A stretch of DNA of 64,000 bases from Octopus bimaculoides. Lineage: Eukaryota. The position numbers and the translations under genes are program-made. Where the stretch lies: assembly GCF_001194135.2 (NCBI RefSeq), contig NC_068994.1, positions 3,094,717 through 3,158,716 of the forward strand, given 5' to 3'. Every line of letters begins with the position of its first letter. The stretch's first letter is position 1. Under the pieces are notes generated by a model that saw nothing but the letters and a program-made list of their open reading frames with translations, ran no database searches and was not told the origin of the DNA. This document shows positions 4,680 through 55,210 of this stretch, in pieces.

Positions 4680-5040
4680 CACCACCACCACCACCACCAC
4701 CACCACCACCACCACNNNNNNNNNNNNNNNNNNNNNNNNNNNNNNNNNNNNNNNNNNNNNNNNNNNNNNNNNNNNNNNNNNNNNNNNNNNNNNNNNNNNN
4801 NNNNNNNNNNNNNNATCCCCACCACCACAATCACCACCACCACCACCACTGCTACCACCATCCCCATCACCACCTCCAACACTGCTACCACCAGCCCCAT
4901 CACTACCACCATTACCTTCACAACCACCACCACCACTGTTGCCAGCACCATCCCTGTCACCACCCCTGTTACCTTCACTACCATCACCACCATCACCACA
5001 ACCTCCACCACCACCACTGCTACCACCATACTGCCACCAC
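4680..5040. repeat. (CAC)n and degenerate CAC/CAT repeat spanning an assembly gap (N 4716-4814)
   Basis: Directly visible. Confidence 0.9.
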
Positions 5041-6409: not shown

Positions 6410-6453
6410 GGCCTGTAGATATATTTCTTTGAAGACCAGTGTCTGCAACTGCT

Positions 6454-9435
6454 ATGCATGAGGCTATGTTAGCGGAGCTGTTATTACTTTTTCTCCTGCT
6501 GCATAACTCATCCTGCACAGACCTTTCCTACAATGTAGCAGAAGAGAAACGCCCTGGGACGTTGATTGGTGACATCGCTCAAGACACCCACTTCCATGAC
6601 CAGTTCTCTGCCCAAGATCACAGCCAGATCACTTTTAGTCAGCTTCATGTAGGTTCATCAGAAAATTTTGAGCTTTTTAACATTTCCAAGACAGGAAAGC
6701 TTTACACGGTTAAAAGGTTGGATGCTGAAGCCCTTTGCATATATGCCACAGATTGTTTCAGGATTCTAAAATGTGTGATCCATCAAGAGGAAGCGTTTGT
6801 TAAAATATTAAAAATAAAAGTTAGTATAGAAGACATAAACGATCACAAACCAGAGTTTCCCGAGAGTCAAGTAGACCTTTGGTTCTCGGAAACTGATGGA
6901 AGGGGCACAAAGCGATCGATATCCAATGCTATAGATAGAGATGTGGGTATCTTAACTTCCAAAATTACATACGAACTTAGTAAAGATGTAGACGAACCAT
7001 TTTCATTGACAGTTTCAAAAAGAGTTGACGGCCGGGCCAAACTTGAGATTATCCTCGATGAAAAGTTAGATAGGGAAGTGAGAGACCAATATTCTTTAGA
7101 AGTTATTGCCAAAGATGAAGGATACCCACCACAACAAAGTAGTTTAAGGGTCCAAATATCCATTTCAGATGTTAACGACAACTCACCCATTTTCTCACAA
7201 AATGTTTATAATGTTTCCATTAAAAAATCCCACCCAAGGTCCATACCAGTTGTAACTCTCTCTGCAACAGATCTAGATGCAGGTGAGAACAGTCGAATAT
7301 TTTACCGTTTTAGTTCTCAGACTTCCAATATTGCCAAAGACTATTTTGATTTGAATGAAATGTCAGGGGAAATCTTCCTGCGGAGAAGATTCCCATCAAG
7401 ACAAATACTAACCTATAAATTATTTGTAGATGTCATCGATGGCGGAAATCCTCCCCTAAGTTCCACTGCTGTTGTATTTGTAAATGTTATCAACCAACAA
7501 AATAAAACTCCCCGTATTGACGTTAAATTCCTCACTTCACAATCCGAAAACTCTGCAACAATCTCAGAAGCCATTAAGGTAGGAAGTTTCATTGCCTATG
7601 TGATAATTATTGACGATGATATTGGCCAAAACGGAGAGATTTCTTGTGAACTTAACCATGATAAATTCCAACTACAGATTTTAGGCTCAAAAGAATACCA
7701 GGTAATTGCTAAAAATCCCATAGACCGAGAAGAACAAGACCATTTTGAGTTTTCTATAATATGTCAAGACAAAGGGACGCCTCCATTGAAGGCAGAACGT
7801 AAGTTTTCAATCCAAGTGACAGACGTCAATGATGTGAGACCAGAATTTACAAAAGATACATTCAAGTTCCTCTCTTATGAGAACCAGGCTCCAAATTTCC
7901 CAGTTGGTTTTGTCAATGCTACTGATCCTGATTTAGATTCTGGAGGTGAACTCCACTATTTCATGTCTGAGAAAGATGAAAATACCCTTCCTTTTCAAAT
8001 ATCAGAAAATGGGTTAATCACCACTAAAGGCTCAATAGACCGAGAAACTAAAGAATTATATGAATTTCCAGTGTTTGTCCGAGACAATGGAAGACCTTCA
8101 CTGAACACTTCTGCCAATGTTGTTGTGGAAGTGATGGATGAAAATGATAATGCACCTTTCTTTACTTTTCCAAGTGAGAATCCTGCAGTTATGGAGGTCT
8201 ACTATGAACCACAAAGTAGCAACAATATCACTTTTCTGAAAGCTTTCGATAATGACAGTCCAAGAAATGCCTTCCTTCAGTTTGAAATTGTTGGAGGCAA
8301 TGAAAGAGATTTGTTTGCGCTTGATTCTTATAATGGTTTGTTGTCTTTCACACGGGATGTTTACCGAAATGATGCTGGTTCCTATGACCTACAGTTCCTC
8401 GTCAAAGACAGTGGCATTCCCGTTCTGTCATCAACAACAACACTAACTTTAATCCTAAGTGTCAGCAATGACACACAGGAAATGATCATGCATCAGCGAA
8501 CACAGCCGAGCGACAGAATCCATCTCAATTTGGTCATAGTTATTGTACTGCTTTCTGTGATAATAGCCATATCAATATCGATCTCGTTAACAGTTTGTAT
8601 TATTCAGTGGAAAAACCAATCCAAAGCACCAGAAAGTGGACGAGTCAGCCCAACAATAAAACAAGCAGCTGAACAAAGTCTTTTGAATTATTCTGCTGAG
8701 CAAGAAATATTCCATACAGATCCGCAAGTAAACAGAAGGTCTTCAGAACAACAGAGTCTCAGTAATTCCACTCTATCCAGGAGACACAGCAATGAACGTA
8801 GTTCAGCAGAGATGTCTATACAAGAACAAAAAATAATTATTCCTGAACAGAAGATGACTCCAGAACAAATAGAAGCTGCGAATAGAAGAACATCGGAACA
8901 AAAGAAGAGGTTCATCAATCCACCAACACGGAGAACGAGTGTTTTAGAAGGAGATATTCTGCCACATGAACAAAAGATTGCGCTCAAAGAAAAAGCAGTT
9001 CAACGTGACAATCGCAAAGTTGAACTTCCGACCAAAAAGATTCCGGAAAAGAAGAAAGGCAAAGCGAGACGTCATAAAAAAGAACCGATTATTATTTGTG
9101 CTAAAAGCAATGAACCCTTAATCAAAAAGACTGCAGTGATGGCAGCTGATACGGCAGTAACCCCACCACCGCTAGTTTTAGATAACACACCCACATCGTC
9201 TCTGAAATCAAACGCAACAGCAACATCTTCTGGGAAATCATCTAGTACTACCGCCACATCATCACTCAAGTCCAATGCAACTGCGACATCATCTCTGCAG
9301 TCAGATACAATATCTTCAATGAAGTCGAATGCAACAGACCGAAGTGATCCATGCTCAAGTATGCCAAAAGGTGCATTCTATCATGTCCTTTATGCATCAG
9401 AAGAAAAACCTCCATTGGATGACAAGCAAACGTGA
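6454..9435 (+). CDS. PCDH: Protocadherin (family level): signal peptide, 6 cadherin repeats, TM helix, ~275-aa cytoplasmic tail; CDS uninterrupted
   Basis: First ATG at 6454 (alternative 6466) with a hydrophobic leader LAELLLLFLLL. EC motifs DINDHKPEF, LDRE, DVNDNSPIF, IDRE, DVNDVRPEF and DENDNAPFF. EC1 has C-x5-C. TM is LVIVIVLLSVIIAISISISLTVCII. TGA at 9433-9435. Confidence 0.95.
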   Translation: MHEAMLAELLLLFLLLHNSSCTDLSYNVAEEKRPGTLIGDIAQDTHFHDQFSAQDHSQITFSQLHVGSSENFELFNISKTGKLYTVKRLDAEALCIYATDCFRILKCVIHQEEAFVKILKIKVSIEDINDHKPEFPESQVDLWFSETDGRGTKRSISNAIDRDVGILTSKITYELSKDVDEPFSLTVSKRVDGRAKLEIILDEKLDREVRDQYSLEVIAKDEGYPPQQSSLRVQISISDVNDNSPIFSQNVYNVSIKKSHPRSIPVVTLSATDLDAGENSRIFYRFSSQTSNIAKDYFDLNEMSGEIFLRRRFPSRQILTYKLFVDVIDGGNPPLSSTAVVFVNVINQQNKTPRIDVKFLTSQSENSATISEAIKVGSFIAYVIIIDDDIGQNGEISCELNHDKFQLQILGSKEYQVIAKNPIDREEQDHFEFSIICQDKGTPPLKAERKFSIQVTDVNDVRPEFTKDTFKFLSYENQAPNFPVGFVNATDPDLDSGGELHYFMSEKDENTLPFQISENGLITTKGSIDRETKELYEFPVFVRDNGRPSLNTSANVVVEVMDENDNAPFFTFPSENPAVMEVYYEPQSSNNITFLKAFDNDSPRNAFLQFEIVGGNERDLFALDSYNGLLSFTRDVYRNDAGSYDLQFLVKDSGIPVLSSTTTLTLILSVSNDTQEMIMHQRTQPSDRIHLNLVIVIVLLSVIIAISISISLTVCIIQWKNQSKAPESGRVSPTIKQAAEQSLLNYSAEQEIFHTDPQVNRRSSEQQSLSNSTLSRRHSNERSSAEMSIQEQKIIIPEQKMTPEQIEAANRRTSEQKKRFINPPTRRTSVLEGDILPHEQKIALKEKAVQRDNRKVELPTKKIPEKKKGKARRHKKEPIIICAKSNEPLIKKTAVMAADTAVTPPPLVLDNTPTSSLKSNATATSSGKSSSTTATSSLKSNATATSSLQSDTISSMKSNATDRSDPCSSMPKGAFYHVLYASEEKPPLDDKQT

Positions 9436-9596: not shown

Positions 9597-9814
9597 TATA
9601 CACACACACACATGTATGTATGTATATACATATGTATATATATATATATATNNNNNNNNNNNNNNNNNNNNNNNNNNNNNNNNNNNNNNNNNNNATATAT
9701 ATACATATATACATATATATATACATATATATACATATATATACTTATATACATATATATACACATACACATATATATACATATAACTATATTTGAACTC
9801 TATAACTATGTACC

Positions 9815-12488: not shown

Positions 12489-13039
12489 NNNNNNNNNNNN
12501 NNNNNNNNNNNNNNNNNNNNNNNNNNNNNNNNNNNNNNNNNNNNNNNNNNNNNNNNNNNNNNNNNNNNNNNNNNNNNNNNNNNNNNNNNNNNNNNNNNNN
12601 NNNNNNNNNNNNNNNNNNNNNNNNNNNNNNNNNNNNNNNNNNNNNNNNNNNNNNNNNNNNNNNNNNNNNNNNNNNNNNNNNNNNNNNNNNNNNNNNNNNN
12701 NNNNNNNNNNNNNNNNNNNNNNNNNNNNNNNNNNNNNNNNNNNNNNNNNNNNNNNNNNNNNNNNNNNNNNNNNNNNNNNNNNNNNNNNNNNNNNNNNNNN
12801 NNNNNNNNNNNNNNNNNNNNNNNNNNNNNNNNNNNNNNNNNNNNNNNNNNNNNNNNNNNNNNNNNNNNNNNNNNNNNNNNNNNNNNNNNNNNNNNNNNNN
12901 NNNNNNNNNNNNNNNNNNNNNNNNNNNNNNNNNNNNNNNNNNNNNNNNNNNNNNNNNNNNNNNNNNNNNNNNNNNNNNNNNNNNNNNNNNNNNNNNNNNN
13001 NNNNNNNNNNNNNNNNNNNNNNNNNNNNNNNNNNNNNNN

Positions 13040-15912: not shown

Positions 15913-16307
15913 NNNNNNNNNNNNNNNNNNNNNNNNNNNNNNNNNNNNNNNNNNNNNNNNNNNNNNNNNNNNNNNNNNNNNNNNNNNNNNNNNNNNNNNN
16001 NNNNNNNNNNNNNNNNNNNNNNNNNNNNNNNNNNNNNNNNNNNNNNNNNNNNNNNNNNNNNNNNNNNNNNNNNNNNNNNNNNNNNNNNNNNNNNNNNNNN
16101 NNNNNNNNNNNNNNNNNNNNNNNNNNNNNNNNNNNNNNNNNNNNNNNNNNNNNNNNNNNNNNNNNNNNNNNNNNNNNNNNNNNNNNNNNNNNNNNNNNNN
16201 NNNNNNNNNNNNNNNNNNNNNNNNNNNNNNNNNNNNNNNNNNNNNNNNNNNNNNNNNNNNNNNNNNNNNNNNNNNNNNNNNNNNNNNNNNNNNNNNNNNN
16301 NNNNATA

Positions 16308-22789: not shown

Positions 22790-23383
22790 NNNNNNNNNNN
22801 NNNNNNNNNNNNNNNNNNNNNNNNNNNNNNNNNNNNNNNNNNNNNNNNNNNNNNNNNNNNNNNNNNNNNNNNNNNNNNNNNNNNNNNNNNNNNNNNNNNN
22901 NNNNNNNNNNNNNNNNNNNNNNNNNNNNNNNNNNNNNNNNNNNNNNNNNNNNNNNNNNNNNNNNNNNNNNNNNNNNNNNNNNNNNNNNNNNNNNNNNNNN
23001 NNNNNNNNNNNNNNNNNNNNNNNNNNNNNNNNNNNNNNNNNNNNNNNNNNNNNNNNNNNNNNNNNNNNNNNNNNNNNNNNNNNNNNNNNNNNNNNNNNNN
23101 NNNNNNNNNNNNNNNNNNNNNNNNNNNNNNNNNNNNNNNNNNNNNNNNNNNNNNNNNNNNNNNNNNNNNNNNNNNNNNNNNNNNNNNNNNNNNNNNNNNN
23201 NNNNNNNNNNNNNNNNNNNNNNNNNNNNNNNNNNNNNNNNNNNNNNNNNNNNNNNNNNNNNNNNNNNNNNNNNNNNNNNNNNNNNNNNNNNNNNNNNNNN
23301 NNNNNNNNNNNNNNNNNNNNNNNNNNNNNNNNNNNNNNNNNNNNNNNNNNNNNNNNNNNNNNNNNNNNNNNNNNNNNNNNNNN

Positions 23384-26362: not shown

Positions 26363-29300
26363 GTATGTATAGATGTGTACGTGTGTATATGTCTGTGTGT
26401 GTTTGTATGTACATAATATATGTTTATAACTAATCAAATAACATATACCAATTAAATACTAATGATTTCCCAAATAGACAACATGAATTCTTGGATTTAT
26501 GAAGGAGGGAAGCTGGCTAATTGTGATGTTTAATGCCTTTTATGGTCGTTGAAGAATTAAAATTGGGTGTTGTGGTCACGTGATGGCATCCACCACAATA
26601 ATGGTTAAAATTATTATAGTAATAATGAAGCAAAGAAATTTCCATTATTTTACATCATTTCAAGCAAAATATTTTCTGTGAAACATTTTATCCCACCAAA
26701 TAATGAGAAATTTGGGTTAAATTGAACAAAACCTCTGTCCAATTCTATTAGAAAACCTATCTGCAACACTGATTGTTGCAGATATAATATTTCTATTTTT
26801 TCAATCGTCATTCTGAGCATGCAGGTCCCACCTTTACCGTTTGAAAGGTAAAAGAGAGAGAGAGACGGGGGGAGGGAGGTTGCGAGTGAACTTGATACAA
26901 TTAAAAAACCTATATATGAATGATGTTGTAATGTAGCATTATTTTGTTTTATCATATTGTCATATTTTCCTTCTGCTAATGTTGAATAGCCAAAAGAGTT
27001 GTGTGAAAGCTTTGTGAGATTTTAAGTACTGGTCTGTTGCCCTCCTATTCTGCTACATACCTCATATACAGTTCTAAAGTGCAACATACTGGTTGGTCTT
27101 GGGAGGAATGGCTGAACCTGATAACTTCACTAACCTTTTGTTTTCTTTAAAAAAAATTTACATGAATTATTTATTTCTTTTCTTATTATTTGAATTATTT
27201 TCTTTTTTTTTTCCATACAAGCAACATATTGTTTAAAATTGGTATCAATTTGCCCTAAAAATAATAACATAACCTCTCAGATTTCATATCCTATCTTAAA
27301 TTTTGAGGTGGCTTGAAAACTAAAACCAGAAAGGCATGCAATAGGGCAGAGTATGACTGGATATAATAAAGCTTTAATAAAACTGTCAAGTCACGTAAAG
27401 TCGACATCAAGCAAGGATGGCAGGATTCCCTCCCTTGAAAGGTAGGGATTAAAGGATTCCCTCCCCTGAAAGTTATTTACACGAGTTCTTTATTAAAGAA
27501 ATCAACTTGATATATTTCCCTGAGTCCCTAGAATGTGAATATGGCCCCAACACATCTATCCAGCCCAAACTAATACTAGTCAACATGAAACAATTACATT
27601 TAACAACTCATAAATCAATCTTAAATCGATTTAACAAACCACACAAAGCAATCTCCACCACATGAATTTCTCAATTACAAATCACAGCTATTGACAAATA
27701 TTGTTCATAAGTTGGATAAAAATTAAATGTTTTGGTTTGTTTTGTTGTTAATTTTTTCTTGTATGTACGTATGTTTATATGTTTTTTACAGTCTGTTACT
27801 TATTTTATATATTTTCAATTTTTAATTTAAAAAAGAAAAATTGCGTTTTTCCAATATCAAATTTATTTAATCTGTGAACCTATATCACGTGTTTTGGTTC
27901 CGGCTGTAATCATGGTGACATGATGTGTTGGCTTTCATGCTGATTGATGAATTTTTTCAATGGGAAACATCAAAGCGGTTACTGACTTACAAAAAAAAAA
28001 AGGCTAATAATAAATANNNNNNNNNNNNNNNNNNNNNNNNNNNNNNNNNNNNNNNNNNNNNNNNNNNNNNNNNNNNNNNNNNNNNNNNNNNNNNNNNNNN
28101 NNNNNNNNNNNNNNNNNNNNNNNNNNNNNNNNNNNNNNNNNNNNNNNNNNNNNNNNNNNNNNNNNNNNNNNNNNNNNNNNNNNNNNNNNNNNNNNNNNNN
28201 NNNNNNNNNNNNNNNNNNNNNNNNNNNNNNNNNNNNNNNNNNNNNNNNNNNNNNNNNNNNNNNNNNNNNNNNNNNNNNNNNNNNNNNNNNNNNNNNNNNN
28301 NNNNNNNNNNNNNNNNNNNTTTTTTTTTTTTTTTTTTTTTTTTTTCTGTGTGAACTGCACCAGTGACATTTAGCTGACCTCCTTTCCCTGACATTGGGAC
28401 CAACACAGGCAAGATACAAACAAAAACAATTGTTAAACCTTCATTTGTTATTTTATCCTGCTGAAATTGAATTTTTTAATCCATTGTACAGTACAGCTTT
28501 TTTTTTATTATACATACACCTACACTCATACACACTTACACACATATATACGTACACACCTGCATACACATTTACATAAATACATATATTATTGGTTTTT
28601 CTTTCTGTTTTCAGTGTAGCACAGTCAGTGACCTCTGGTGATAAACAGGAAAGCAAAAAGGGTGTAATTTTTCAACTTCTAAAAACCACAAATTCCTGAA
28701 ACAGCCAAACAAGCACAGTAATAGTAGCCATAATAATGATAAAAGCAATTACTATTAATAATAATAATAATTATAATAATAACAACAATAATCTAGAGTA
28801 TAGTCTACCTGCACTTGGTCGATAACTGGGAAACATTCCATTAACTGCAGTTTATCTACAAAACTTGAGATCTTAACTGTTAGATACCAGCAAAGATTGT
28901 ATTATAATAATAATATAAATAATATAATTAATACATGTATTATAGCATAATATAATCTAATATGACACATATAATATGAAATATATATATATACATCTAT
29001 ATATATATATATAAATGTATGTATGTATAATACGATATAATTAATTGTGAATATGAAATGGAGTGTTGATATTTTTTCCTATAAAAAAAATCAATAAAGC
29101 AATGAAGTAATTAGGAAGAAACAATTATATATTTAAAAAAAGAAAGAAACAAGAAAACCCAACAAAAATACATCAATATATTTCATGTCATAAATATAAA
29201 TATATATATATTTAGAAACATAAGTTAATTTGTTGTTTTTTTTGTTTTTGTTTACTTTTAATTAAATCAAGAAAATGAAGAAAATTGTTTATAAAAAGGA

Positions 29301-35115: not shown

Positions 35116-35312
35116 TTAACCCTTTCGTTACTGTATTTCTGTTGAGATGCTCTGTAACAAAGAATTTAGTAAAATAACTTAGTTATCATTCTGCTAGTGT
35201 TAAGAACATAAATTGTGACTAATATTTGGTGGAAGATTTTTATTCAGAATTTAAGAAAACAAGACTACAGAGCCAGAATCGGTTTCAGCCAGGTTGGTAA
35301 TGAAAGGGTTAA
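35116..35312. mobile_element. piggyBac-like MITE (189 bp, 35120-35308) with TTAA target-site duplication
   Basis: TTAA|ccctttcgttac...gtaatgaaaggg|TTAA; the TIRs match at 11 of 12 positions. Confidence 0.8.
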
Positions 35313-35676
35313 CAACCGACCCACCCCACACCTGGTGCTTTGGGTGACCTTAACAGACCCCACTCAATTACAAAAATCTAGGTTCTACCTTCTGACTTTG
35401 CCTAACTTCATTTGTCCCTTTCCCTCTGTCACACAGACCCTAATTAGGGTCACAAACACAGCCATTCTTGATCTCATTCTGTTGTTCTTTATTTCTTCTA
35501 TTCCTTTATTCCTGTTCTTGTTTCTCTCATGGAACTGTGAGCCCAACTGGAGCACCAACTTAAAGGTTTTTGTCAATCGAAACAAGCCCAGTCCTTATCT
35601 GGATGCTTGTATTTATTCAGTCAGTCTTTGTCCTCAAACACCTCCACCCCTCACACTCTGTATATACACAGACACG

Positions 35677-35707
<31 letters not shown>

Positions 35708-36377
35708 GTGTGTGTATGCAAGTGTATACATGTACATATAACTGGTATAGTCGTGGACACATCACCACCACCACCACAACTATCACTCCTGACACTACAA
35801 CCATCACCACCACCACCACAATCATCACCGCCACCACAACCATCACCCCTGCCACCATCACAACCATCACCACTGCCACCACAATCAACACCATTGCCAC
35901 CACAACCATCACCACCACCACGACCATTACCACCACCACCACAACTCCAACTACAACCCCTCCCCACCACCATCTCTACTTCCATCATCACTGATTCTGT
36001 CATTATTAATCTCTTCACAGCAAACAGATCTAAAATTGAAATATGTTCCTCTAAAATAAACATATCAGACACTCAATCACTCGTTTCAACCCACCCTGGA
36101 CCACCACCACCAACATTCTCTTGCATGTTACTCTCACTCCCCCCTCACCTCTTTATTTTATGAGTTGATTATCTAAATCTTAATCCAACTGTAGACTTCT
36201 ATTCTTTCTCCCTATATACACAGACATATATATATAATGTATATACACACACATCTGCATGGACAACAGATATTAAATGATGACGATGATGATGGGGGAA
36301 TGGTTGTGGTGGTGATGATGATGATGAGGATAAGGATATACATACATATACATGTGTATGCGTGTCTGTGTGTATAC

Positions 36378-37140: not shown

Positions 37141-37932
37141 CATCTCCCAACTAATTATATCACCTAAGTAACAAAAACTTATGACTACTTCTTGTGAGGC
37201 ATTTAAAACAGTCGATTTCCAATGGACTCAGAGTACATATTGTCCCAGTGCATACAAAGTGCACTTTCTCGGTTCACTAACCTCTGGTCCCACGACACCA
37301 TTTCTGTACCCGTAACTAATAAACACCAATATATACGTCGTTGAATGCTGCAGTTGATAGATTTAGTAACGGTTGATGGAAGAAGTGATTTCATGGCTTA
37401 TTCAGCCATCGGCTATGTTAGGCAAAACTTGAAGTTTCCGTCAACACAAATTTTACAACATTCTCCTCCTCCTTCTCATGTGTGTTTTCCATGCTGGCAT
37501 GGGTTGGACAGTTTGACAGGAGCCAATGAGGCAGAGGACTACACCAAGCTTTACTGTCTACTTTGGCAGGGTTTCTGTGGCTGGATGCCCTTCCTAATGT
37601 CAACCATTTACCCCACACACACACACACACACATACATTGCAACTGCCACTGTAATTCTCCATTATTGTATCCTTGTTTGCTTTTGTTTTATATTTATTT
37701 ATGTTTTCTATTCAAAAGTGAAAGCAGTGGCATTGGCTCCTTCGATGTGAACTTTCTGGCCCCTCAAAGATGAAATTACTATAAATAAAGGCTGTCTCCT
37801 GTCTTCACCCCAAACTACCTTACCCTGTACCCATCACAGTGCTATCACTGCAGATGAATTACCTGATGTATTCTCCCTGGGGCTTCACGAGTGAAACCAC
37901 TCTCTCAAAACTGTGTCTAACTTCATTGTGTC

Positions 37933-40236
37933 ATGTTCGCACTCTTACTAGTGTTTATAAACCTCCGGTGCTACTTGTGTGTCGACTTAATATATTATGT
38001 GGAAGAAGGCGAAAAACCAAACACATATGTTGGTGACATTGCAGCTGATTCTAAGCTTCTGAACAGCATCAGTGCCAAGGAAATGGATCTGATTCGATTC
38101 AGTCAGGTGGGGCAAGGTGTAACAGACGGTTCTCATTTCTTCCGAGTGTCAGAAAAAACAGGTAAGCTGTACACTACTCAAATACTAGATGCTGAGTCGA
38201 TGTGTGTTCAGAAAATGGAATGTTCCAGAAATGTAGACATTGCAATTAAAAAAGCTGAGACTTTTATGAAAATTCTTGAGATAAAAATATGTGTGTTGGA
38301 CCTTAATGATCATCAGCCTCAATTTCCGAAGAGTAAAGTGAAAATAGAGTTTTTAGAGGATGATAAAAGGGGGAGAATAAGGAAGATCCCAAGTGCTCTG
38401 GATAAAGATATTGGGATATTAAACTCAAAGATAGAATATCAACTGAAGGTCAGTTCTAGTGATCCCTTTTCCTTGACCGTGTCCAAACGCCTGGATGAAA
38501 CAGATGAACTTTGGATTTCTCTCAAAGACAATCTTGACAGAGAAACAAAAGATATGTACGCTATGCAGGTAATTGCTAAAGACAGTGGTATTCCACCTAA
38601 AGAGAGTGTTCTGGATGTTGAAGTAGAAGTTATTGATGTCAATGATAATCCACCAGTATTTACACAGAATGTCTACAACATTACTGCCATCAATGAAAAC
38701 TATCAGACTTCTCCGATTCTGGTGTTATCAGCAAGTGATGAAGATATGGAGAAAAATGGTGACATCACATACCACTTCAGCATCAACACACCAGAGAATT
38801 TAAAATCCCATTTTGAATTGAATGAAAAGACAGGTGAATTGTTCTTGCAAAGGAAGTTTATTTCAGGGCAGAAGCTGACACATTGGTTGTACGTTGAGGC
38901 GATTGATGGAGGCAAACCTCCTCTCAGTTCTATGGCTGCTGTTCTAGTGCGTGTCATCAATCAATTGAATCAATCACCAAAGATATACTTCAACTTTGTG
39001 TCAAGAGCATCAGGAAAAACAGCCATTATATCTGAACAGATCCAAGTCAGTAGTTTCATTGCATACATTAAAGTGGAAGATGAAGACGTGGGTCAAAATG
39101 GTGACATTGAATGTCAGATGAACCATGATAAATTCCAACTGGTTGAATTAGGTCCCAAGAAGTTCAAAGTTATTATTAAAAATAAAGTTGACAGAGAGTT
39201 GAATGACTACTATGACGTCACAATCATCTGCCATGACAAGGGTAACCCACCTTTACAGACCAAAGACAAGTTCTCAGTCATCATAACAGACATTAATGAT
39301 GAACATCCAAAATTTTCTAAGAAATTGTATCAGTTTTGGGCAAAAGAAAACAACCAAGCTAACATCTCAATCGGTGTTCTTAGTGCCACAGATGCAGACC
39401 TAGGAGCAGGGGGACAGTTACATTTCTCTCTGTCTTCCAGCAATGAATCTGATACACCATTTCAAATTTCCAAAGATGGAGTGATATCAGCAAAAGAACC
39501 ATTAGACCGTGAACAACAAGGTTGTTACAAGTTTGAAGTTGTGGCTTGTGATAGAGGGTCCCCATCACTGAGTAGCACAGCAAGTATCAATGTCATAATT
39601 ACAGATGAAAACGATAATGCACCCTATTTTACATTCCCCCCAAATAACCCCTTTCCCCTGGACATTTCTTACCACAACTCCAGTCAAAACAACATTACCA
39701 TTTTAAAGGCAAAAGACATAGACTGGGGACAGAATGCTTTCCTTACATACAACATTATCTCAGGAAATAATCGAAGCTTGTTTGATATCAACCATTACTC
39801 AGGTTTACTACTATTTGCCCGCCAAATCAGTATCAACGATTCGGGTGTCCATGAGCTACAGATATCTGTGAAGGACAGCGGTACACCTTCTCTCTCGTCT
39901 CTTACTAATTTAACTCTGACAGTAACCATTAACAACAAACAAATGAAATCAAAGACATCTGCTCAAAAACAAACAGTAGTAGGATTGGATTCAAGTTTAT
40001 TGGTCGTCATAATCCTGGTGGCTGTTGTGATGTCTGTGTCGTTTGCAATTCCACTGACATGGTGGATTATTAAATGCAACAACAGGAACAATCAGCATTA
40101 TCACCGCAAAATCCGTCCATCAGATCAAAGTGCACCTGATCCAGAGGCACATGCAAGTGCATCAACATGCAGACAACCAAACTTAGATGGAGTCAACTCT
40201 TCTGTTCTTCTTGAAACAACAGAAATTACACAACAG
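37933..40236 (+). CDS. PCDH: Protocadherin 2, large first coding exon (signal peptide, 6 EC repeats, TM, start of tail)
   Basis: MFALLLVFINL leader; DLNDHQPQF, LDRE, DVNDNPPVF, VDRE, DINDEHPKF, LDRE, DENDNAPYF; EC1 C-x5-C; TM LLVVIILVAVVMSVSFAIPLTWWII. Ends at the perfect donor CAG|GTGAGT (40236/40237, phase 0), two codons before the ORF stop. Confidence 0.93.
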
Positions 40237-40443
40237 GTGAGTTGAAAAACTTGTCTAAGCTACCAATATCTACTCTCAAAGATAGAATATAGGGTTCTGA
40301 ATACCGTACCTAATATACTCCCTCATCTTAGAACAATGTCAGACTTTCGTTTCTAGTCTAAATTCTATACATTACATGCTTCTTGCTGTTGCTTAAGCCA
40401 AGGTCTGCTCCAATTCCACACCAGTTAACCTTATGTCACTCTG

Positions 40444-40625
40444 ATTCTTTTCTACACTAGGCACAAGGCCCAAAATTTGGGGGGAGGGGCCAGTCAATTA
40501 GATGCAACTGTACTTAATTTATCAACCCGAAAGGATGAAAGGCAAAGTGGACTTCAGTGGAATTTGAACTCAGAACACAAAGACAGACGAAATCCTGCTA
40601 AGCTTTTCTGCCAGCTCGCCACCCT
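40444..40625 (-). mobile_element. Family A SINE, inverted partner 1, in protocadherin-2 intron 1
   Basis: Reverse complement matches the family A head, core and tail. Confidence 0.85.
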
Positions 40626-40700
40626 CTTCTGTCATTCTGATTGAGAGGTAGGTGTGTGCGTATATGAAGGCTGTGAGCTGGCAGAGTTATTAGCATGATA

Positions 40701-40918
40701 AGGTGGCGAGTTGGCAGAAACATTATCATGCTGGGTGAAATGCTTAGTGGTATTTCATCTGTCTTTACATTCTGAGTTCAAATTCCTCCGAGGTCAACTT
40801 TGCTTTTCATCCTTTTGGGGTTGATAAATTAAATACCAGTTGCGTACTGGGGTCAATGTAATCGACTAGTCCCCTCCCACAAAATTTCAGGCCTTATGCC
40901 TATAATACAAAGGATTAT
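40701..40918 (+). mobile_element. Family A SINE, inverted partner 2, in protocadherin-2 intron 1
   Basis: ggtggcgagttggcagaa...ttctgagttcaaattcc...ggccttatgcctataatacaaaggattatt. Confidence 0.85.
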
Positions 40919-41289
40919 TGCACGCGTGCATGTGTGTATGAATGAATCTATATGTATAGTTGTATGTGTATTTATATCCTGTATGTGTGTCACATGTATC
41001 TCTGTGTATATTGTGATGTATCTATGCATGTCTGTATATGTGTACAAGTGTGCATACATGTGTATATGTTTGTGTGTATATCTGAATGTGTATGTATGTG
41101 TGTGTATCTGTCTTTGTGTATGCGTGTGTCTGTAGATGTGCAAGCATCTATGTGTTTGTATCTGCATGTGTGTGTGTGTGTGTGTACACCACCAATCTTT
41201 AGTGTAATTAAGCAAACCCTATTGCAATTCGACCCCTGTATATACTGTGACCCCTATATTCAAACTTTATCAAATCTTACTTCACCTAG

Positions 41290-41419
41290 ACCTGCGTACA
41301 AGAATTAGCCATTCCCCCTGGTGGCAGTGATGGAAACCAATTTAGTGTGAACACACTGGCAATTATGCCACCAGATCAAACAGTTCAATTGAATGGTACC
41401 GAGATCAGCTGTAACCCAG
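41290..41419 (+). CDS. PCDH: Predicted protocadherin-2 coding exon 2 (130 nt, phase 0 to 1)
   Basis: Acceptor tcttacttcacctAG|acc, an open frame TCVQELAIPPGGSDGNQFSVNTLAIMPPDQTVQLNGTEISCNP, and donor CAG|GTAGGC. The phase matches exon 1. Confidence 0.65.
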
Positions 41420-41858
41420 GTAGGCAGGTCTTCATTCCACACATGCATCCCCACATATTACTTAATGTAATGATGAAGATGAGGGTGATGGAGGACGATG
41501 GTGGTGGTGGTGGTGGTGGTGGTGGTGGTGGTGACGACGAAATACTGGGATTGGCATAATTGACTGAAAACAATTAAAGGTGGTGCCCCAGCATGACCAG
41601 AGCCCAGTATCTCAAACCAATAAAAACAAATAGATTGAGCTGTTAGAACATCAAATATGATACCTTGCAGTATTTGTTCTGACTCCCTCCATTCTGGGTT
41701 CAAATTCCACCAAGATCAGATTTGTTTTTCATCCCTTCAGAGTTAATAAAAAGGAGATCAATCGAAGGCAGAACAACTTCAAGACAGATACCTTGTGGTA
41801 TTTATTCAGATTCTTTGTATTTGGAGTTGAAATTCCATTTTGGCTGAATTCTTTCATT

Positions 41859-42272
41859 TTTATTCTTTTACTTGTTTCAGTCATTTGACGGTGACCATGC
41901 TGGAGCACCGCCTTTAGTCAAACAAATCGATCCCAGGACTTATTCTTCGTAAGCCTAGTACTTATTCTATCGGTCTTTTTTTTGCCAAACCGCTAAGTTA
42001 CGGGGGACATAAACACACCAGCATCGGTTGTCAAGCGATAGTGGGGGGACAAACACAGACACACAAACATATGCATATATATATATCAACCCATGCTAGC
42101 ATGGAAAGCGGACGTTAAACGATGATGATGATGATGATGATATACGACGGGCTTCTTTCAGTTTCCATCTACCAAATCCACTCACAAGAAGACACTTGCC
42201 CGAGGTGCCACGCAGTGGAACTGAACCCAGAACCATGTGGTCGGTAAGCAAGCTACTTACCACACAGCCACT
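41859..42272 (-). mobile_element. SINE family B (near full length)
   Basis: Minus 5' end agtggctgtgtggtaagtagcttgcttaccgaccacatggttctgggttcagttcc is a tRNA-like head, followed by a ggcacc.cgggcaagtgtcttct core. Confidence 0.85.
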
Positions 42273-42618
42273 TGATCCCTTTCCAGTTTAACATCATCGC
42301 CTGGCACGTTGGGTACCTTTGAAGGTATTTAGGTCAAGTTTTCAGTTGGAGGACACCTTCATGCCTCCCACCACTCTCAGAGACCCTGTAAAGAATCAAA
42401 GGGTGCTGGTCCTTACTTTATATTCTCCCCTTCAGGGTCCCCTACTTTGTCCCTTTAGTTTCATCAGTGTAGTTGTTGGTAAAGGAAAATTTCCCGCTGC
42501 TCACCTGTAATCTAGGGATCCACCTTACTGACAAAACAAACATCTGGGAGAAAAAGAAAAAAACACTTTCTAGTTTTCCGAACATGTAAAACCATGTTTT
42601 ATTTCTTTTATTTTACAG

Positions 42619-42965
42619 AACATTCTATCGTGCCTTACATTGATGAGAACCCAAGGGTCAGAGCTATGAAGATTCTGCACCGGGCTTTCAGCTGCCCAGA
42701 CGACCAAACCAATAATATCAGCTATCTTTACAAACTCCACCTGTCTCAGATCAGGGAACTGGTCATTTGCCAACCAAACCTAGTAAGAGGTCCAAGCATA
42801 ACTTTACATAATGAAAACCAAAGCATCGTCCCTCAGTCGAATGCTGAATCAGTCCAGTATTGCAGACAGAATCAGAAATTATACCGTATCCATTCTGTCA
42901 GGCAGAACACACAAAAGACTTGCTATAAGAAACATTGCAACACTTCCACAGAACAAAATGAATAA
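42619..42965 (+). CDS. PCDH: Predicted protocadherin-2 terminal coding exon 3 (phase 1 start)
   Basis: Strong acceptor ttttatttcttttattttacAG|aa. G+AA makes Glu in the frame of the 42594 ORF, which stays open to TAA at 42963-42965; AATAAA at 42961-42966 overlaps the stop. Confidence 0.65.
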
Positions 42966-43957
42966 ACGACACAAATATTCTGAAATTTTACTTTGTTTTT
43001 CAAGTGTGTGTGGTCTGGTGATTTAAATGTTGAGCTTATGATCATTGGGTTATAGGTTCAATACCTGCACCAGGCAGCACATTGTGTCCTTTTGCAAGGT
43101 AGTTCATTTCACATTGCTCCAGTTGACTTCAACTGAAAATGAGTTGCAGTGGTAGCTGGGGCTAAACCCTGTGACAGACTTGTGTCCCATTTAATGAGGA
43201 GTCATGTTTTCTTAGTTAAATACCTGCTGTGTTTGTTACACTAAAAGGAAAACTTTACATTTGGGGTCCTGCCTCATTTTGCACTGCAACTGTATCCCTG
43301 TTTTAGCATCAGTTCTGATTTGATCAACCACTATTAATTACTTGTAGACAATCACCATTGCCACTTGCTGGAAAGAGTACCAACATTGAGGGTCAAAGGC
43401 CCAATGACTGCAGGAGCTAACGTTCTGCAACAGAGGCATCCTGACATCAAAGACAATGATGATAGGAAATTAATCGATTGAGTTAGGGTTGCTGAATGAT
43501 ACTAGCATCTTGTTAAGTATTGAACACTGTTAAAACTGTTATTGGTCTTAAGAGCAACACTCGAACATACATACATTCGGCCTGTGAAGTGATTCCCGAT
43601 AACAGTTTGGATTGCTCCAGCTGGTACAGATATCATATGTCTCACTTTCTACCTCACTATCTTCACTCACTTGCTACTCTATTACTTATCTTTGTTTTCT
43701 TTGTGTGCAGAAAGACTTCCATGACCATCACAAGTGAAACAATGGGGCAGCTACCAGTTAATGCTACCAGCTTCAAGTGTTAGCCTCTGCTGCATTTGAA
43801 GGGGGAAAAATCAAATATTAAAATTCTTTTTAGTAATATTTTCTCAGTCAGAAATACGTGTCCGGCTGAGTTCTAATTAATTATCTCCCTTGGATCATTT
43901 CACTTTCTGAGATGAAATTACATCTATGAAAGGCCGGACTCTTGCGATCATATACGT

Positions 43958-45436: not shown

Positions 45437-46135
45437 TTAGGCAAAATATTCAGCTTCTTGTTCAGCGATGGCCTTGTCTAAATTGCACTTCACTTTCTCG
45501 ATATCAACTTTACACTCACAATATTCACTGAGAGCAAATATCAGCTCGGGACACAGATCCTTTAGGCGCACTTGATTGGGCACGAGATTAATAAAAACAT
45601 AGCATTTCTTATCCAGTGTGGTTTTTTGAGCTTCAATTTTAGCATCCGATGCATCCGACTTTAGGTGTTTGGCAACTAATTTCCACGAATCGTCATCACT
45701 TATATGTTCCAAAATATTTTTTAAAACAGTGAAGTTCATATCTTTGATTTCTTCTGCTTTCTCAATAAGGTCAGCTAGGTCTTTGTTGTAAGGAATACAC
45801 TGATCTGGAAAATACATTTTAATATACCTGTCCATAACAGATTCAACTCTTTTTTTGTATTTCTCTTCAACTTCGTCATCGAAAAACTTCACAAGACATT
45901 CAATAATTGTTTCGATGCTTCGTTTTTCATTTGGGGGAGGTAAGGATTTCTCATAATAATAAAGCGGTAACATCGTAACATCATGACAAAACTCTTCAAA
46001 TACTTGCATATCTTGCAAATTTCTCTCACTTTTTTCCATTTTCATCTTCCATTTCTGCTTTTCATCTTCCAAATATTTATATTTTACCTGATTAAGTTTA
46101 TTCTGGAAATTACGATTTCTCTTTCGCTTGCTCAT
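45437..46135 (-). CDS. Orphan 232-aa protein: basic N-terminus (KRKR), charged helical middle, possible death-fold C-terminus
   Basis: A 699-bp non-repetitive ORF in AT-rich DNA with a caacaATG context. ILEHISDDDSWKLVAKHL...SDAKIE...LIFAL...VDIEKV resembles death-domain helix spacing (inference). Confidence 0.7.
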   Translation of the reverse strand: MSKRKRNRNFQNKLNQVKYKYLEDEKQKWKMKMEKSERNLQDMQVFEEFCHDVTMLPLYYYEKSLPPPNEKRSIETIIECLVKFFDDEVEEKYKKRVESVMDRYIKMYFPDQCIPYNKDLADLIEKAEEIKDMNFTVLKNILEHISDDDSWKLVAKHLKSDASDAKIEAQKTTLDKKCYVFINLVPNQVRLKDLCPELIFALSEYCECKVDIEKVKCNLDKAIAEQEAEYFA

Positions 46136-46200
46136 TGTTGCGAAGACCCGAAAAACTACGTCTAGGAAACTAGGAAGTAAAACTTTTTAAAATATATATT

Positions 46201-46745
46201 AAAAAACGAATCGGAAACGATGAAGACGAAACGTATTTACTTTGTGTATGAAGTTCTCTTGTGTTTTAATAACCAGACGTTTTACTATCGCAACCACCCA
46301 ACTAGGAAATAAAATACTAAGTAAAAGTTTTTTTAAAAAACGAATCGGAAACGATGAAGAAGAAACGTATTTACTTTGTGTATGAAGTTCTCTTGTGTTT
46401 TAATAACCAGACGTTTTACTATCGCAACCACCCAACTAGGAAATAAAATACTAAGTAAAAGTTTTTTAAAAAATGAATCGGAAACGATGAAGACGAAACG
46501 TATTTACTTTGTCTATGAAGTTCTCTTGTGTTTTAATAACCAGACGTTTTACTATCGCAACCACCCAACTAGGAAATAAAATACAAAGTAAAAGTTTTTT
46601 AAAAAATGAATCGGAAACGATGAAGACGAAACGTATTTACTTTGTGTATGAAGTTCTCTTGTGTTTTAATAACCAGACGTTTTACTGTCGCAACCACCCA
46701 ACTAGGAAATAAACTACAAAATAAAAGTTTAAAAAAAAAAACGAA
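46201..46745. repeat. Tandem array of four nearly identical 133-134-bp units
   Basis: gaatcggaaacg starts at 46208, 46342, 46475 and 46608, with a partial at 46743; only a few substitutions between units. Confidence 0.95.
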
Positions 46746-53578: not shown

Positions 53579-55210
53579 TCATGAGAGGTGATGGAGGACA
53601 AAGTTGGTCAAGCGTCCAGGCAAGTATTTCTGAAACTCAATGTTTGCTTGGTTCAAAACTCTGGCAGTGAGACACTGCAGAGAAAGAGGTTCTTTTACAG
53701 GAACAAGTTTAGCAGCATCAAAGACAATGTACGGTGATTCTTTGAGAAATTTTCCCAGAAACTGGTTTTGTGTTTCATGACATGTTTGGAGAATAATGTC
53801 TGTTGGCTGCCATTTGCCATGAAGCCTTAAAGAAATTGCAGGTTTACTTCCATCTGTAATGCCTTCCTGTTCAGCATGTAACGGTTCTGTCTGAGACAAA
53901 ACCTTGGTATATCGATCAAGAACAGAACAGGAGAACCTTTGAAAGCTTACTGAATCCCATTTGTGTTGGTAATGAATGAGAATTTGGAGCAAGTTCACCA
54001 CAAACAGTAACAACGTTTCCCATGCATTCACCTTGTAAGAACTTTTCAAAGATCTTTCTTCACAGTTGCTGTTTTGGAGGGATTCCCAGTTGATGACGAT
54101 ATCACTAGCAATCTGCCGAACAAGATTTATGACCTCTCTGAAGGGCATGGAATAATGTTGATCTTTACTGTATATTTTCCAAAACACCTCCAATTCAAGT
54201 GTAACAATATCAGGGCCCGTCACACACCTCATTCTTTGACAGGCTCGAAGTAAATGGCAATATATGTCCCATGCTAGTGAAACATTACCAAGGTCACACT
54301 GCAGCCATGCTGCATAACCTAATGCCTCGAGTGAGGTACAGCAAACACCTAATATTTTTTCTGTCACCATTAGTGCAGGAAATTCAAAGATATCAGTGTT
54401 GTGTTCAGCTTCATCAAGAGCTTCAATAAATATCTGTGTTGTGGTGCTGTCAAAGTACTGTTGTGGAGAATGTTGTGGGTAAGGAAAAGTTACCAGTAAA
54501 TAGACGAGTATTCTCCATTGCCAGTGTGTGGCAGCAAGCCGGAAACAATTCTCACCGAGACCATTGTATGTGTAAGGACTGAAGCCCTTCTGGAGGAGAA
54601 ATTTAAACACCTCTAAGTTACCTTTACAGGCTGCAAAATGCAGAACTGTGTCACCATTTGCATCAGTTGCATATAAATTAGCACCATTTGAAAAGAGGAG
54701 ATCTACTAACTCCGTGTTAAAGACAGCTTCCATCAATGGAGTCACTCCTTTATGGTCAGGAAAATTAACATCAGAACCTCTTTCAATAAGAAACTTAACA
54801 ATATCCACATTGCCACCTTTAACAGACATTTTCAGAGCAGTGTTACCCAAATGGTCTTTGACATTGATATTGGCTCCATAATCAAGAAGAATCTGCAACA
54901 TATTCTTGCAGCGTTCTGATGCAGCCACTAAAAGAGGCGTCACTTGAGCATCGTCATTATATATCACAGGTTGATCAACAGGAACATTGCATTCCTGCAA
55001 GAAATACTGAACAAGTTCTAAGTTGTTGTATGAAACAGCTAGAAACAGTGCAGTGAATCCCTGGATCTTTCGGCTGGCAATACGTTTGCGATGTGGCATT
55101 TTAAGAGGATCCAGTTTAGACTTCACACCAACAAGGTTACATTTTCTCACATAACGCATCACTTTGTTCGATATGGAAATAATCTGCTCCCCCGTAAGTT
55201 GTTGTGACAT
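53579..55210 (-). CDS. FEM1: Fem-1-like ankyrin-repeat protein, probable Cullin-2 E3 substrate receptor (543 aa, single coding exon)
   Basis: About 6 N-terminal ankyrin repeats (TALFLA, TPLLVAA, TALKMS, TPLMEA, TVLHFAA). ALMVTEKILG resembles the FEM1 ALxIRERILG motif, and C-terminal PLSLQCLTARVL...LPGRLTNFVLHH resembles the FEM1 VHL/BC-box end. Family-level call only. Confidence 0.85.
   Translation of the reverse strand: MSQQLTGEQIISISNKVMRYVRKCNLVGVKSKLDPLKMPHRKRIASRKIQGFTALFLAVSYNNLELVQYFLQECNVPVDQPVIYNDDAQVTPLLVAASERCKNMLQILLDYGANINVKDHLGNTALKMSVKGGNVDIVKFLIERGSDVNFPDHKGVTPLMEAVFNTELVDLLFSNGANLYATDANGDTVLHFAACKGNLEVFKFLLQKGFSPYTYNGLGENCFRLAATHWQWRILVYLLVTFPYPQHSPQQYFDSTTTQIFIEALDEAEHNTDIFEFPALMVTEKILGVCCTSLEALGYAAWLQCDLGNVSLAWDIYCHLLRACQRMRCVTGPDIVTLELEVFWKIYSKDQHYSMPFREVINLVRQIASDIVINWESLQNSNCEERSLKSSYKVNAWETLLLFVVNLLQILIHYQHKWDSVSFQRFSCSVLDRYTKVLSQTEPLHAEQEGITDGSKPAISLRLHGKWQPTDIILQTCHETQNQFLGKFLKESPYIVFDAAKLVPVKEPLSLQCLTARVLNQANIEFQKYLPGRLTNFVLHHLS

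What the first reader, a model, noticed from the sequence alone, without database searches (positions are those of the whole stretch)
37933..42965. Hidden 3-exon structure of protocadherin 2, with two phase-compatible tail exons
Seen: the ORF stop lies 2 codons past CAG|GTGAGT. A 130-nt open exon (41290-41419, phase 0 to 1) and a 347-nt terminal exon (42619-42965, phase 1) join without a stop into a 926-aa protein (...EITQQ|TCVQELAIPP...SCNPE|HSIVPYIDENPRV...). This large-exon-plus-small-tail-exon layout resembles vertebrate clustered Pcdh genes and contrasts with the uninterrupted neighbour. No vertebrate CM-type tail motif was recognised. Intron retention would give a short-tailed 770-aa isoform.
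Basis: partly seen in the sequence, partly recalled or inferred. Interest (0 to 1): 0.7.

Follow-up and report, generated by a model that had tools for sequence, protein, structure and literature searches.

The report
Annotated three-exon octopus protocadherin gene

Summary
Exons 37933-40236, 41290-41419 and 42619-42965 have GT-AG borders and phases 0 and 1, and they join into one 926-aa reading frame.

That protein is identical to XP_052828877.1 / UniProt A0A0L8HKK5 of Octopus bimaculoides. The annotated gene spans the same 5033 bp.

Orthologues in O. vulgaris (926 aa) and Argonauta hians (924 aa) have the same three coding exons. Exon 2 is 130 nt in both and the junctions are the same. The introns differ in length and cannot be aligned with Argonauta.

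Exon 3 is under purifying selection as strong as the ectodomain (dN/dS 0.09-0.14). Exon 2 is more weakly constrained over long distances (0.6-0.7).

The likeness to vertebrate clustered protocadherins is one of layout only. A HMMER scan of the tail against 1.84 billion representative proteins found only the Argonauta orthologue and an exon-3 ORF from another octopus. None of 118 paralogues carries the tail. The upstream neighbour has its own stop codon and no in-frame consensus donor.

Three other O. bimaculoides protocadherin genes also have one large exon followed by small 3' exons. The literature already calls cephalopod protocadherins multi-exonic and states that they do not share final exons.

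The finding is ordinary and already known. I saw no RNA junction reads.

The parts
37933..40236 (+). Coding exon 1 (2304 nt, 768 codons). It encodes the signal peptide, a cadherin-repeat ectodomain (about six repeats by length), the transmembrane helix (about residues 688-713) and the first 55 cytoplasmic residues. It ends at CAG|GTGAGT in phase 0.
   Evidence: Pfam gives Cadherin_2 at residues 21-106 and six PF00028 stretches. Identity is 95% nt to O. vulgaris and 76% to Argonauta, with no frame-breaking indels. dN/dS is 0.10-0.14.
40237..41289 (+). Intron 1 (1053 nt, GT-AG). It holds an inverted pair of interspersed-repeat copies (40526-40615 / 40730-40819) and a TG-rich tract.
   Evidence: The orthologous introns are 1034 nt (O. 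vulgaris) and 769 nt (Argonauta). The Argonauta intron cannot be aligned.
41290..41419 (+). Coding exon 2 (130 nt, phase 0 to phase 1). It encodes TCVQELAIPP...EISCNP plus the first base of a Glu codon.
   Evidence: It is exactly 130 nt with the same borders in O. vulgaris and Argonauta. dN/dS is 0.11 against O. vulgaris and 0.6-0.7 against Argonauta.
41420..42618 (+). Intron 2 (1199 nt, GT-AG). It holds a (GGT)n run and a further copy of the intron-1 repeat at 41690-41750.
   Evidence: The orthologous introns are 2673 nt (O. vulgaris) and 666 nt (Argonauta).
42619..42965 (+). Coding exon 3 (347 nt including the TAA stop at 42963-42965). It encodes the conserved C-terminal 115 residues (…SIVPY..EN.RVRAMKIL.RA.SCPDDQTNN…SQIREL…HNENQSI.PQ…ESVQY…NQKLYRIHS..QNTQKT.YKKHCN). 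An AATAAA hexamer (42961-42966) overlaps the stop.
   Evidence: dN/dS is 0.09-0.14. 72 alignment columns are invariant across four octopods. Outside the orthologues there is no relative among 1.84e9 representative proteins.
6454..9435 (+). Upstream neighbour: a protocadherin paralogue with a single-exon CDS (993 aa), its own 250-aa low-complexity tail and its own stop. It is not part of this gene.
   Evidence: the exact 993-aa protein is annotated; the O. vulgaris orthologue CAI9733428.1 is also 993 aa. It shows no similarity to the exon 2/3 tail and has no phase-0 consensus donor in its cytoplasmic part.

Best explanation
This is an ordinary, already annotated member of the expanded octopus protocadherin family. 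It lies on chromosome record CM046614.1 of Octopus bimaculoides at about 3.13 Mb, and its product is XP_052828877.1. One large exon encodes the signal peptide, the cadherin-repeat ectodomain, the transmembrane helix and 55 cytoplasmic residues. Two short introns are then removed, and two small exons private to this gene add the remaining 158 cytoplasmic residues. The last 115 of these (exon 3) form a strongly conserved module restricted to octopods. It is predicted to be mostly disordered and has no detectable relatives. Shown here: the gene model, its conservation and the privacy of the tail. Inferred by analogy with vertebrate protocadherins: calcium-dependent homophilic recognition through the ectodomain, with intracellular partners docking on the conserved linear motifs of the tail. 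Diversity in this family comes from duplication of whole genes, each with its own tail, and not from splicing many first exons onto shared tail exons.
For: The joined 926-aa protein is identical to XP_052828877.1 / UniRef100_A0A0L8HKK5. O. vulgaris CAI9733427.1 (926 aa, 95% identity) and an Argonauta hians protein (924 aa, 69%) cover 100% of it. Both loci have three coding exons with a 130-nt exon 2 and GT-AG at the same junctions. Exons are free of indels while introns are riddled with them, and the Argonauta introns cannot be aligned. dN/dS for exon 3 is 0.09-0.14, equal to the ectodomain. Pfam finds cadherin repeats only. The tail was found only in the Argonauta orthologue and a genomic exon-3 ORF among 1.84e9 representatives, and only in orthologues or fused models among 126 fetched cephalopod protocadherins. 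Paralogues P0071, P0101 and P0108 have the same layout of a large exon (794-806 aa) plus small 3' exons. PMC9068888 states that cephalopod PCDHs are multi-exonic, arose by full gene duplication and do not splice multiple first exons to shared final exons. PMC6339937 cites '168 multi-exonic PCDH genes'.
Against: I saw no RNA evidence directly, neither junction reads nor a spliced transcript contig. The only Logan contigs recovered are colinear with genomic DNA, introns included. Exon 2 is only weakly constrained between Octopus and Argonauta (dN/dS 0.6-0.7). In one other octopus, the species behind SRR11869384, the exon-3 acceptor reads AA instead of AG, so the junction is not universal. An older RefSeq model gave a different 3' end and fused this gene to its neighbour. 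The ectodomain and tail functions are analogy only. The tail structure model is of low confidence (mean pLDDT 33).
Confidence: 0.93

Rival explanations
1. Exons 2 and 3 form a vertebrate-style constant region. Several upstream large protocadherin exons, the 993-aa neighbour among them, would be spliced onto them from alternative promoters.
For: The layout resembles a variable exon plus constant exons. Two gene models join the neighbour to this gene: XP_014771503.1 (older O. bimaculoides, 1869 aa) and XP_029645457.2 (O. sinensis, 1753 aa). This hints at read-through transcription.
Against: Both fused models keep this gene's whole exon 1 and do not skip to exon 2. The current RefSeq annotation splits them. 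The tail occurs in no other protein. The neighbour has its own stop and tail, and its only consensus-like donor is in phase 1, which is incompatible with exon 2. The O. sinensis donor position has no GT in O. bimaculoides. The literature states that cephalopods do not use shared final exons.
Confidence: 0.03
2. The tail exons are chance open frames carried from one annotation to another. The real product would be the 770-aa protein that ends QQVS* just inside the unspliced intron.
For: The 770-aa ORF exists, and the same ORF was called on a genomic contig of another octopus (P0002). I examined no transcript evidence directly.
Against: Exon 2 length, the phases and the splice sites are conserved out to Argonauta, where synonymous sites are saturated (dS 1.2-1.9) and the introns cannot be aligned. 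dN/dS for exon 3 is 0.09-0.14. The donor is a perfect CAG|GTGAGT. The same protein carries both a RefSeq and a UniProt accession.
Confidence: 0.03
3. The gene also makes a four-exon isoform. An internal donor in exon 3 (CTA|GTAAGA, exon ending at 42782) would be spliced to a small terminal exon at 43711-43737, replacing the last 61 residues with KDFHDHHK.
For: The older RefSeq model XP_014771503.1 ends ...ICQPNL|KDFHDHHK. The window has a phase-0 GTAAGA donor at 42783 and a pyrimidine-rich CAG acceptor ending at 43710.
Against: The terminal exon has no match within 10 kb downstream in O. vulgaris or Argonauta, and none on the Logan contig L003. The donor is absent in Argonauta. The current RefSeq model drops this end. 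It would also delete the most conserved part of the tail.
Confidence: 0.15

Closest known systems
Expanded cephalopod protocadherin family (O. bimaculoides 168 genes; Albertin et al. 2015; Albertin et al. 2022, PMC9068888; Styfhals et al. 2019, PMC6339937)
   Same: It lies on the same O. bimaculoides chromosome record as the other paralogues sampled. Its best hits are octopus, argonaut and cuttlefish protocadherins. It is multi-exonic, with one large exon plus small 3' exons like the paralogues. It has its own tail and its own stop.
   Different: Nothing essential differs. Its particular cytoplasmic tail is unique to this orthologue group (Octopus and Argonauta) and resembles no other family member's tail.
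Vertebrate clustered protocadherins alpha and gamma (variable exon plus three constant exons; Wu & Maniatis 1999/2000, as summarised in PMC7339444)
   Same: [quoted passage not shown] Small downstream exons encode the rest (for the vertebrate layout, for this gene).
   Different: There are two tail exons here, not three. They serve one first exon only, have no sequence similarity to any vertebrate constant region and are not shared. Diversity arises by gene duplication, not by promoter choice plus cis-splicing.
Vertebrate non-clustered (delta) protocadherins
   Same: Each is a stand-alone gene with a large ectodomain exon and private small 3' exons for the cytoplasmic tail. [quoted passage not shown] In gene organisation this is the closer analogue.
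   Different: The tail has no CM3 RRVTF motif and no WIRS motif. Styfhals et al. likewise found no CM1-3 motifs in O. vulgaris PCDHs.
Vertebrate beta-protocadherins (single-exon genes without constant exons)
   Same: The upstream neighbour (6454-9435) resembles these in having its whole CDS in one exon.
   Different: Gene 2 is not of this type, and the RefSeq names 'beta-15' and 'beta-16-like' do not indicate orthology.

Membership tests
Protocadherin (non-classical cadherin) | Tandem extracellular cadherin repeats followed by a single transmembrane helix | tested here: met
   Pfam gives Cadherin_2 at residues 21-106 and six PF00028 stretches, E=2e-68. A hydrophobic stretch LLVVIILVAVVMSVSFAIPLTWWII follows the ectodomain.
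Protocadherin (non-classical cadherin) | Whole ectodomain encoded by one unusually large exon | tested here: met
   Exon 1 is 2304 nt and uninterrupted. The same holds in the orthologues and paralogues.
Protocadherin (non-classical cadherin) | No classical-cadherin catenin-binding cytoplasmic domain | tested here: met
   Pfam hits are confined to the ectodomain, up to about residue 665. No cytoplasmic-domain family reached E<=0.01.
Cephalopod expanded protocadherin family | Closest relatives are cephalopod PCDHs, on the PCDH-rich chromosome | tested here: met
   One search gives 1527 hits, with octopus, argonaut and cuttlefish PCDHs on top. The gene is at CM046614.1:3.13 Mb. Paralogues lie at 1.07, 1.62 and 34.3 Mb of the same record.
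Cephalopod expanded protocadherin family | Complete multi-exonic gene with its own 3' exons (full gene duplicates, no shared final exons) | tested here: met
.
Vertebrate-type clustered Pcdh (alpha/gamma) variable-constant organisation | [quoted passage not shown] | tested here: met
   Exon 1 ends 55 residues after the TM helix.
Vertebrate-type clustered Pcdh (alpha/gamma) variable-constant organisation | Tail (constant) exons shared by many upstream first exons | tested here: not met
   The tail is found only in orthologues. The neighbour has its own stop and no phase-0 consensus donor. No RNA junction data were available, so this is a sequence-level test only.
Vertebrate-type clustered Pcdh (alpha/gamma) variable-constant organisation | Sequence homology of the tail to the alpha or gamma constant region | tested here: not met
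   phmmer of the 158-aa tail against 1.84e9 representatives returned no vertebrate protein.
Vertebrate-type clustered Pcdh (alpha/gamma) variable-constant organisation | Stochastic promoter choice through conserved promoter elements and CTCF looping | not testable with these tools
   This needs expression and chromatin data.
Delta-protocadherins | Conserved cytoplasmic motifs (CM1/CM2, and CM3 RRVTF in delta-1) | tested here: not met
   RRVTF is absent and there is no WIRS motif. CM1 and CM2 were not scanned for by pattern, but Pfam and phmmer found no relation to vertebrate tails.

The most novel reading that the evidence does not exclude
The fused gene models (neighbour plus this gene, in an older O. 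bimaculoides annotation and in O. sinensis) might reflect real, regulated read-through transcription. If so, the neighbour's promoter or large exon would sometimes be joined to this gene's exons. That would be a rudimentary shared-3'-exon arrangement arising independently in an octopus protocadherin pair.
Probability: 0.04. Interest if true: 0.55.

Novelty: already known. Interest (0 to 1): 0.08.

Why it matters
It matters little beyond confirming that the first-stage reader can rebuild a eukaryotic gene model correctly from raw sequence. The gene, its exact protein and the multi-exon nature of cephalopod protocadherins are already public. One modest point may be useful. The exon-3 tail is a strongly constrained cytoplasmic module found only in octopods, with no detectable relatives, so it is a candidate docking site for lineage-specific protocadherin signalling. 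The intracellular pathways of cephalopod protocadherins remain unknown (PMC6339937, PMC7339444).

Tried and rejected
1. A tail-only word-index search returned just one Logan ORF and missed even the 94%-identical O. vulgaris protein. I therefore did not use it as evidence of absence and ran the exhaustive HMMER scan instead.

2. I examined Logan contigs L003-L005 for spliced transcripts. All are colinear with the genome through the introns, so they say nothing about splicing.

3. An AlphaFold model of the 213-residue cytoplasmic domain from a 4-sequence alignment had mean pLDDT 33 and only a tentative helix at about residues 823-850. It was too poor for a fold search.

4. The Albertin 2015 and Wu & Maniatis 2000 papers are not held in the library. 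I cited them only through papers that quote them.

5. A search for the SRA run prefix to identify the Logan species gave one irrelevant paper.

6. The bacterial promoter/terminator scan near the stop is meaningless for a eukaryote and I ignored it.

7. I considered that exons 2 and 3 might derive from a transposon. I rejected this because the repeats in this region lie only in the introns and the tail peptide has no other relatives.
Full report
**What the window is.** The window is eukaryotic, with 35-41% G+C in the sequenced parts. It holds two large cadherin-type reading frames on the + strand, at 6439-9435 and 37933-40245. An exact-sequence look-up places it in Octopus bimaculoides. The gene behind that protein lies at CM046614.1:3132649-3137681 of assembly GCA_001194135.2. 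Its span is 5033 bp, the same as 37933-42965, and its sequence is found in the window starting at 37933.

**Checking the observation.** I re-derived the model from the sequence.
- Exon 1 (37933-40236, 2304 nt) ends CAACAG|GTGAGT. This donor matches the MAG|GTRAGT consensus at 9 of 9 positions.
- Reading on into the intron gives V, S and a stop, which explains the 770-aa ORF.
- Exon 2 (41290-41419, 130 nt) follows CTTCACCTAG| and ends CCCAG|GTAGGC.
- Exon 3 (42619-42965, 347 nt with the stop) follows TTTCTTTTATTTTACAG|.
- The phases are 0 and 1. The joined CDS has one terminal stop and gives 926 aa with the junction peptides quoted in the finding.

The sequence alone would be weak evidence, because stop-free stretches of 150 codons or more occur elsewhere in the window. 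The decisive evidence is comparative.

**Comparative evidence.**
- *Orthologues.* A database search with the 926-aa protein returned a 926-aa O. vulgaris protein (CAI9733427.1, 95% identity, 100% coverage). It also returned a 924-aa Argonauta hians protein (69% identity, 100% coverage).
- *Exon structure.* I fetched both loci and mapped the proteins back onto them. Each gene has three coding exons and exon 2 is exactly 130 nt in both. The junction sequences are the same: CAG|GTGAGT or GTAAGT, then AG|ACCTG, then CCAG|GTA, then TTTACAG|AACA. Intron lengths differ freely: 1053, 1034 and 769 nt for intron 1, and 1199, 2673 and 666 nt for intron 2.
- *Exons against introns.* Against O. vulgaris the exons are 92-95% identical with no indels, while the introns are 78-89% identical with hundreds of gap columns. 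Against Argonauta the introns and flanks cannot be aligned, but the exons still align at 64-76%.
- *Selection.* Nei-Gojobori estimates give dN/dS of 0.09-0.14 for exon 3 in all three comparisons, the same as the ectodomain (0.10-0.14). Exon 2 gives 0.11 between the two Octopus species but 0.6-0.7 against Argonauta. The 55 cytoplasmic residues encoded by exon 1 are similarly relaxed.
- *Reading.* Exon 3 is a constrained coding exon. Exon 2 is a length- and phase-conserved linker whose ends (TCVQ..., ...NPE) are kept.
- *A fourth octopus.* Logan contigs of run SRR11869384 and its siblings carry the exon-3 frame at 92-94% amino-acid identity, although the adjoining intron is only about 80% identical.

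**What the protein is.** Pfam finds an N-terminal Cadherin_2 domain and six stretches of PF00028, and nothing in the tail. The sequence shows a signal peptide, a single hydrophobic transmembrane stretch and a 213-residue cytoplasmic domain. This is a protocadherin of the expanded cephalopod family. There were 1527 significant hits, led by octopus, argonaut and cuttlefish protocadherins at 45-53% identity over the ectodomain only.

**Is the tail a shared 'constant' region?** This is the only part of the finding that could have been interesting, so I tested it in several ways.
- *BLASTP.* The 158-aa tail hit only the two orthologues among the 120 best protocadherin hits.
- *Exhaustive scan.* A phmmer scan of the tail against 1.84 billion representative proteins found two proteins only. 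One is the Argonauta orthologue and the other is the exon-3 ORF of the Logan contig.
- *Profile search.* A profile of the whole cytoplasmic domain found only orthologues and the two fused models among 126 fetched proteins.
- *The neighbour.* The upstream neighbour (6454-9435) is annotated as a 993-aa single-exon CDS with its own 250-residue tail and stop, in both O. bimaculoides and O. vulgaris. Its cytoplasmic part contains no phase-0 consensus donor that could feed exon 2. The one site matching 7 of 9 positions is in phase 1.
- *Literature.* Albertin et al. [quoted passage not shown] They attribute the diversity to full duplication of multi-exonic genes (PMC9068888).
- *Caveat.* The representative library collapses proteins above 50% identity, so an isoform hidden inside another cluster cannot be excluded. 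I had no RNA junction data.

**Is the layout unusual for the family?** It is not. Three other O. bimaculoides protocadherins on the same chromosome record were examined (853, 927 and 903 aa). Each has one large first coding exon of 794-806 codons followed by small 3' exons, spread over 11-51 kb. Styfhals et al. quote '168 multi-exonic PCDH genes' from the 2015 genome paper. Large ectodomain exons with small cytoplasmic exons are a general trait of protocadherin genes. For clustered genes this is summarised in PMC7339444. The title of Wu & Maniatis 2000 appears, and its extension to non-clustered genes is my own knowledge. In organisation this gene is closer to a stand-alone delta-type gene with private tail exons than to an alpha or gamma variable exon. 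Its tail has none of the vertebrate motifs I scanned for (RRVTF, WIRS), in line with Styfhals et al..

**How it most likely works.**
- *Shown.* This is a three-coding-exon gene with canonical splice sites, a conserved reading frame and a private, constrained tail.
- *Inferred by analogy with vertebrate protocadherins (PMC7339444).* The ectodomain mediates calcium-dependent homophilic trans recognition. The cytoplasmic domain recruits intracellular partners.
- *The tail structure.* The tail is predicted to be largely disordered, with mean pLDDT 33 and a tentative helix over RVRAMKILHRAFSCPDDQTNNISYLYKL. Its conservation is therefore best read as a string of short linear motifs.
- *Not tested.* Promoter use, the 5' UTR structure and the poly(A) site remain unknown. 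An AATAAA hexamer overlaps the stop codon, but whether it is used is not known.

**Loose ends.**
- *Fused models.* Two gene models fuse the neighbour to this gene. XP_014771503.1 (older O. bimaculoides annotation, 1869 aa) joins the neighbour's last codon to two codons upstream of this gene's ATG. It also ends with an alternative terminal micro-exon (KDFHDHHK, 43711-43737), reached from an internal GTAAGA donor at 42783. XP_029645457.2 (O. sinensis, 1753 aa) joins the neighbour at ...EAANRRT to 14 codons upstream of the ATG.
- *Why I discount them.* In O. bimaculoides the O. sinensis donor position has no GT, and the 14-codon leader contains a stop. The micro-exon has no counterpart in O. vulgaris, Argonauta or the Logan contig L003. 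The current RefSeq annotation splits the genes. I regard the fusions as prediction artefacts or read-through. In any case they keep exon 1 intact and do not support exon sharing.
- *A changed acceptor.* In the Logan species the exon-3 acceptor reads ACAA|AAC instead of ACAG|AAC. An upstream TAG| 46-48 nt away would keep the frame, both there and in O. bimaculoides, but this is speculation.

**Verdict.** It is already the public annotation, and the layout is the family norm. The suggested kinship with the vertebrate variable/constant system fails its defining test. Interest is low.

Noticed in passing
window 4716-4814, 9652-9694, 10577-11015, 12489-13039, 15913-16304, 22790-23383, 28017-28319: Runs of N (assembly gaps) lie between the two protocadherin genes. 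They explain the clusters of six-frame 'ORFs' and the apparent 20% G+C in these stretches.
   Followed up: yes
window 6454-9435 joined to 37892/37927-42965 (proteins P0126, P0123): An older O. bimaculoides RefSeq model (XP_014771503.1, 1869 aa) and an O. sinensis model (XP_029645457.2, 1753 aa) fuse the upstream neighbour to this gene. The product would be a protein with two ectodomains and two TM helices. They are probably read-through or prediction artefacts. A candidate acceptor (AG at 37890-37891) lies 41 nt upstream of the ATG.
   Followed up: partly
window 42783 (internal GTAAGA donor) and 43711-43737: An alternative terminal micro-exon encoding KDFHDHHK* was used by the older model. It has no match in the O. 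vulgaris or Argonauta loci or on the Logan contig L003.
   Followed up: partly
L003:740-760 (Logan SRR11869384), equivalent to window 42610-42620: In another octopus of unidentified species the exon-3 acceptor AG is AA, yet the exon-3 frame stays 92-94% identical at the protein level. An in-frame TAG acceptor lies about 46-48 nt upstream in both species.
   Followed up: partly
window 45437-46135 (-): A 232-aa single-ORF gene lies convergent to the protocadherin. It is conserved in the same position in O. vulgaris (59% identity) and Argonauta (42%). It has no significant Pfam family, only a weak Death-domain hint (E=0.12 in one of three orthologues; motif DDSWKLVAKHLG).
   Followed up: partly
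window 53579-55210 (-): A 543-aa ankyrin-repeat ORF. A 544-aa ankyrin gene sits at the matching place downstream of the Argonauta orthologue, which suggests the order protocadherin, small gene, ankyrin gene is kept across octopods. The two ankyrin proteins were not compared directly.
   Followed up: partly
window 46199-46730: A tandem repeat of 133 bp in 4 copies at 97% identity lies directly upstream of the start of the 232-aa minus-strand gene.
   Followed up: no
window 40526-40615 / 40730-40819 and 41690-41750: Three copies of one interspersed repeat, two of them as an 82%-complementary inverted pair, lie in introns 1 and 2. None touches an exon. A (GGT)n run at about 41497-41531 and TG-rich tracts at about 40930-41190 are also intronic.
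   Followed up: yes
window 42961-42966: An AATAAA hexamer overlaps the TAA stop codon of exon 3. Whether it serves as the poly(A) signal is unknown.
   Followed up: no
window 35215-36163: Overlapping ORFs lie over a CCACCA-rich low-complexity region (84-nt period, 2.1 copies at 35768-35942), about 2 kb upstream of the gene.
   Followed up: no
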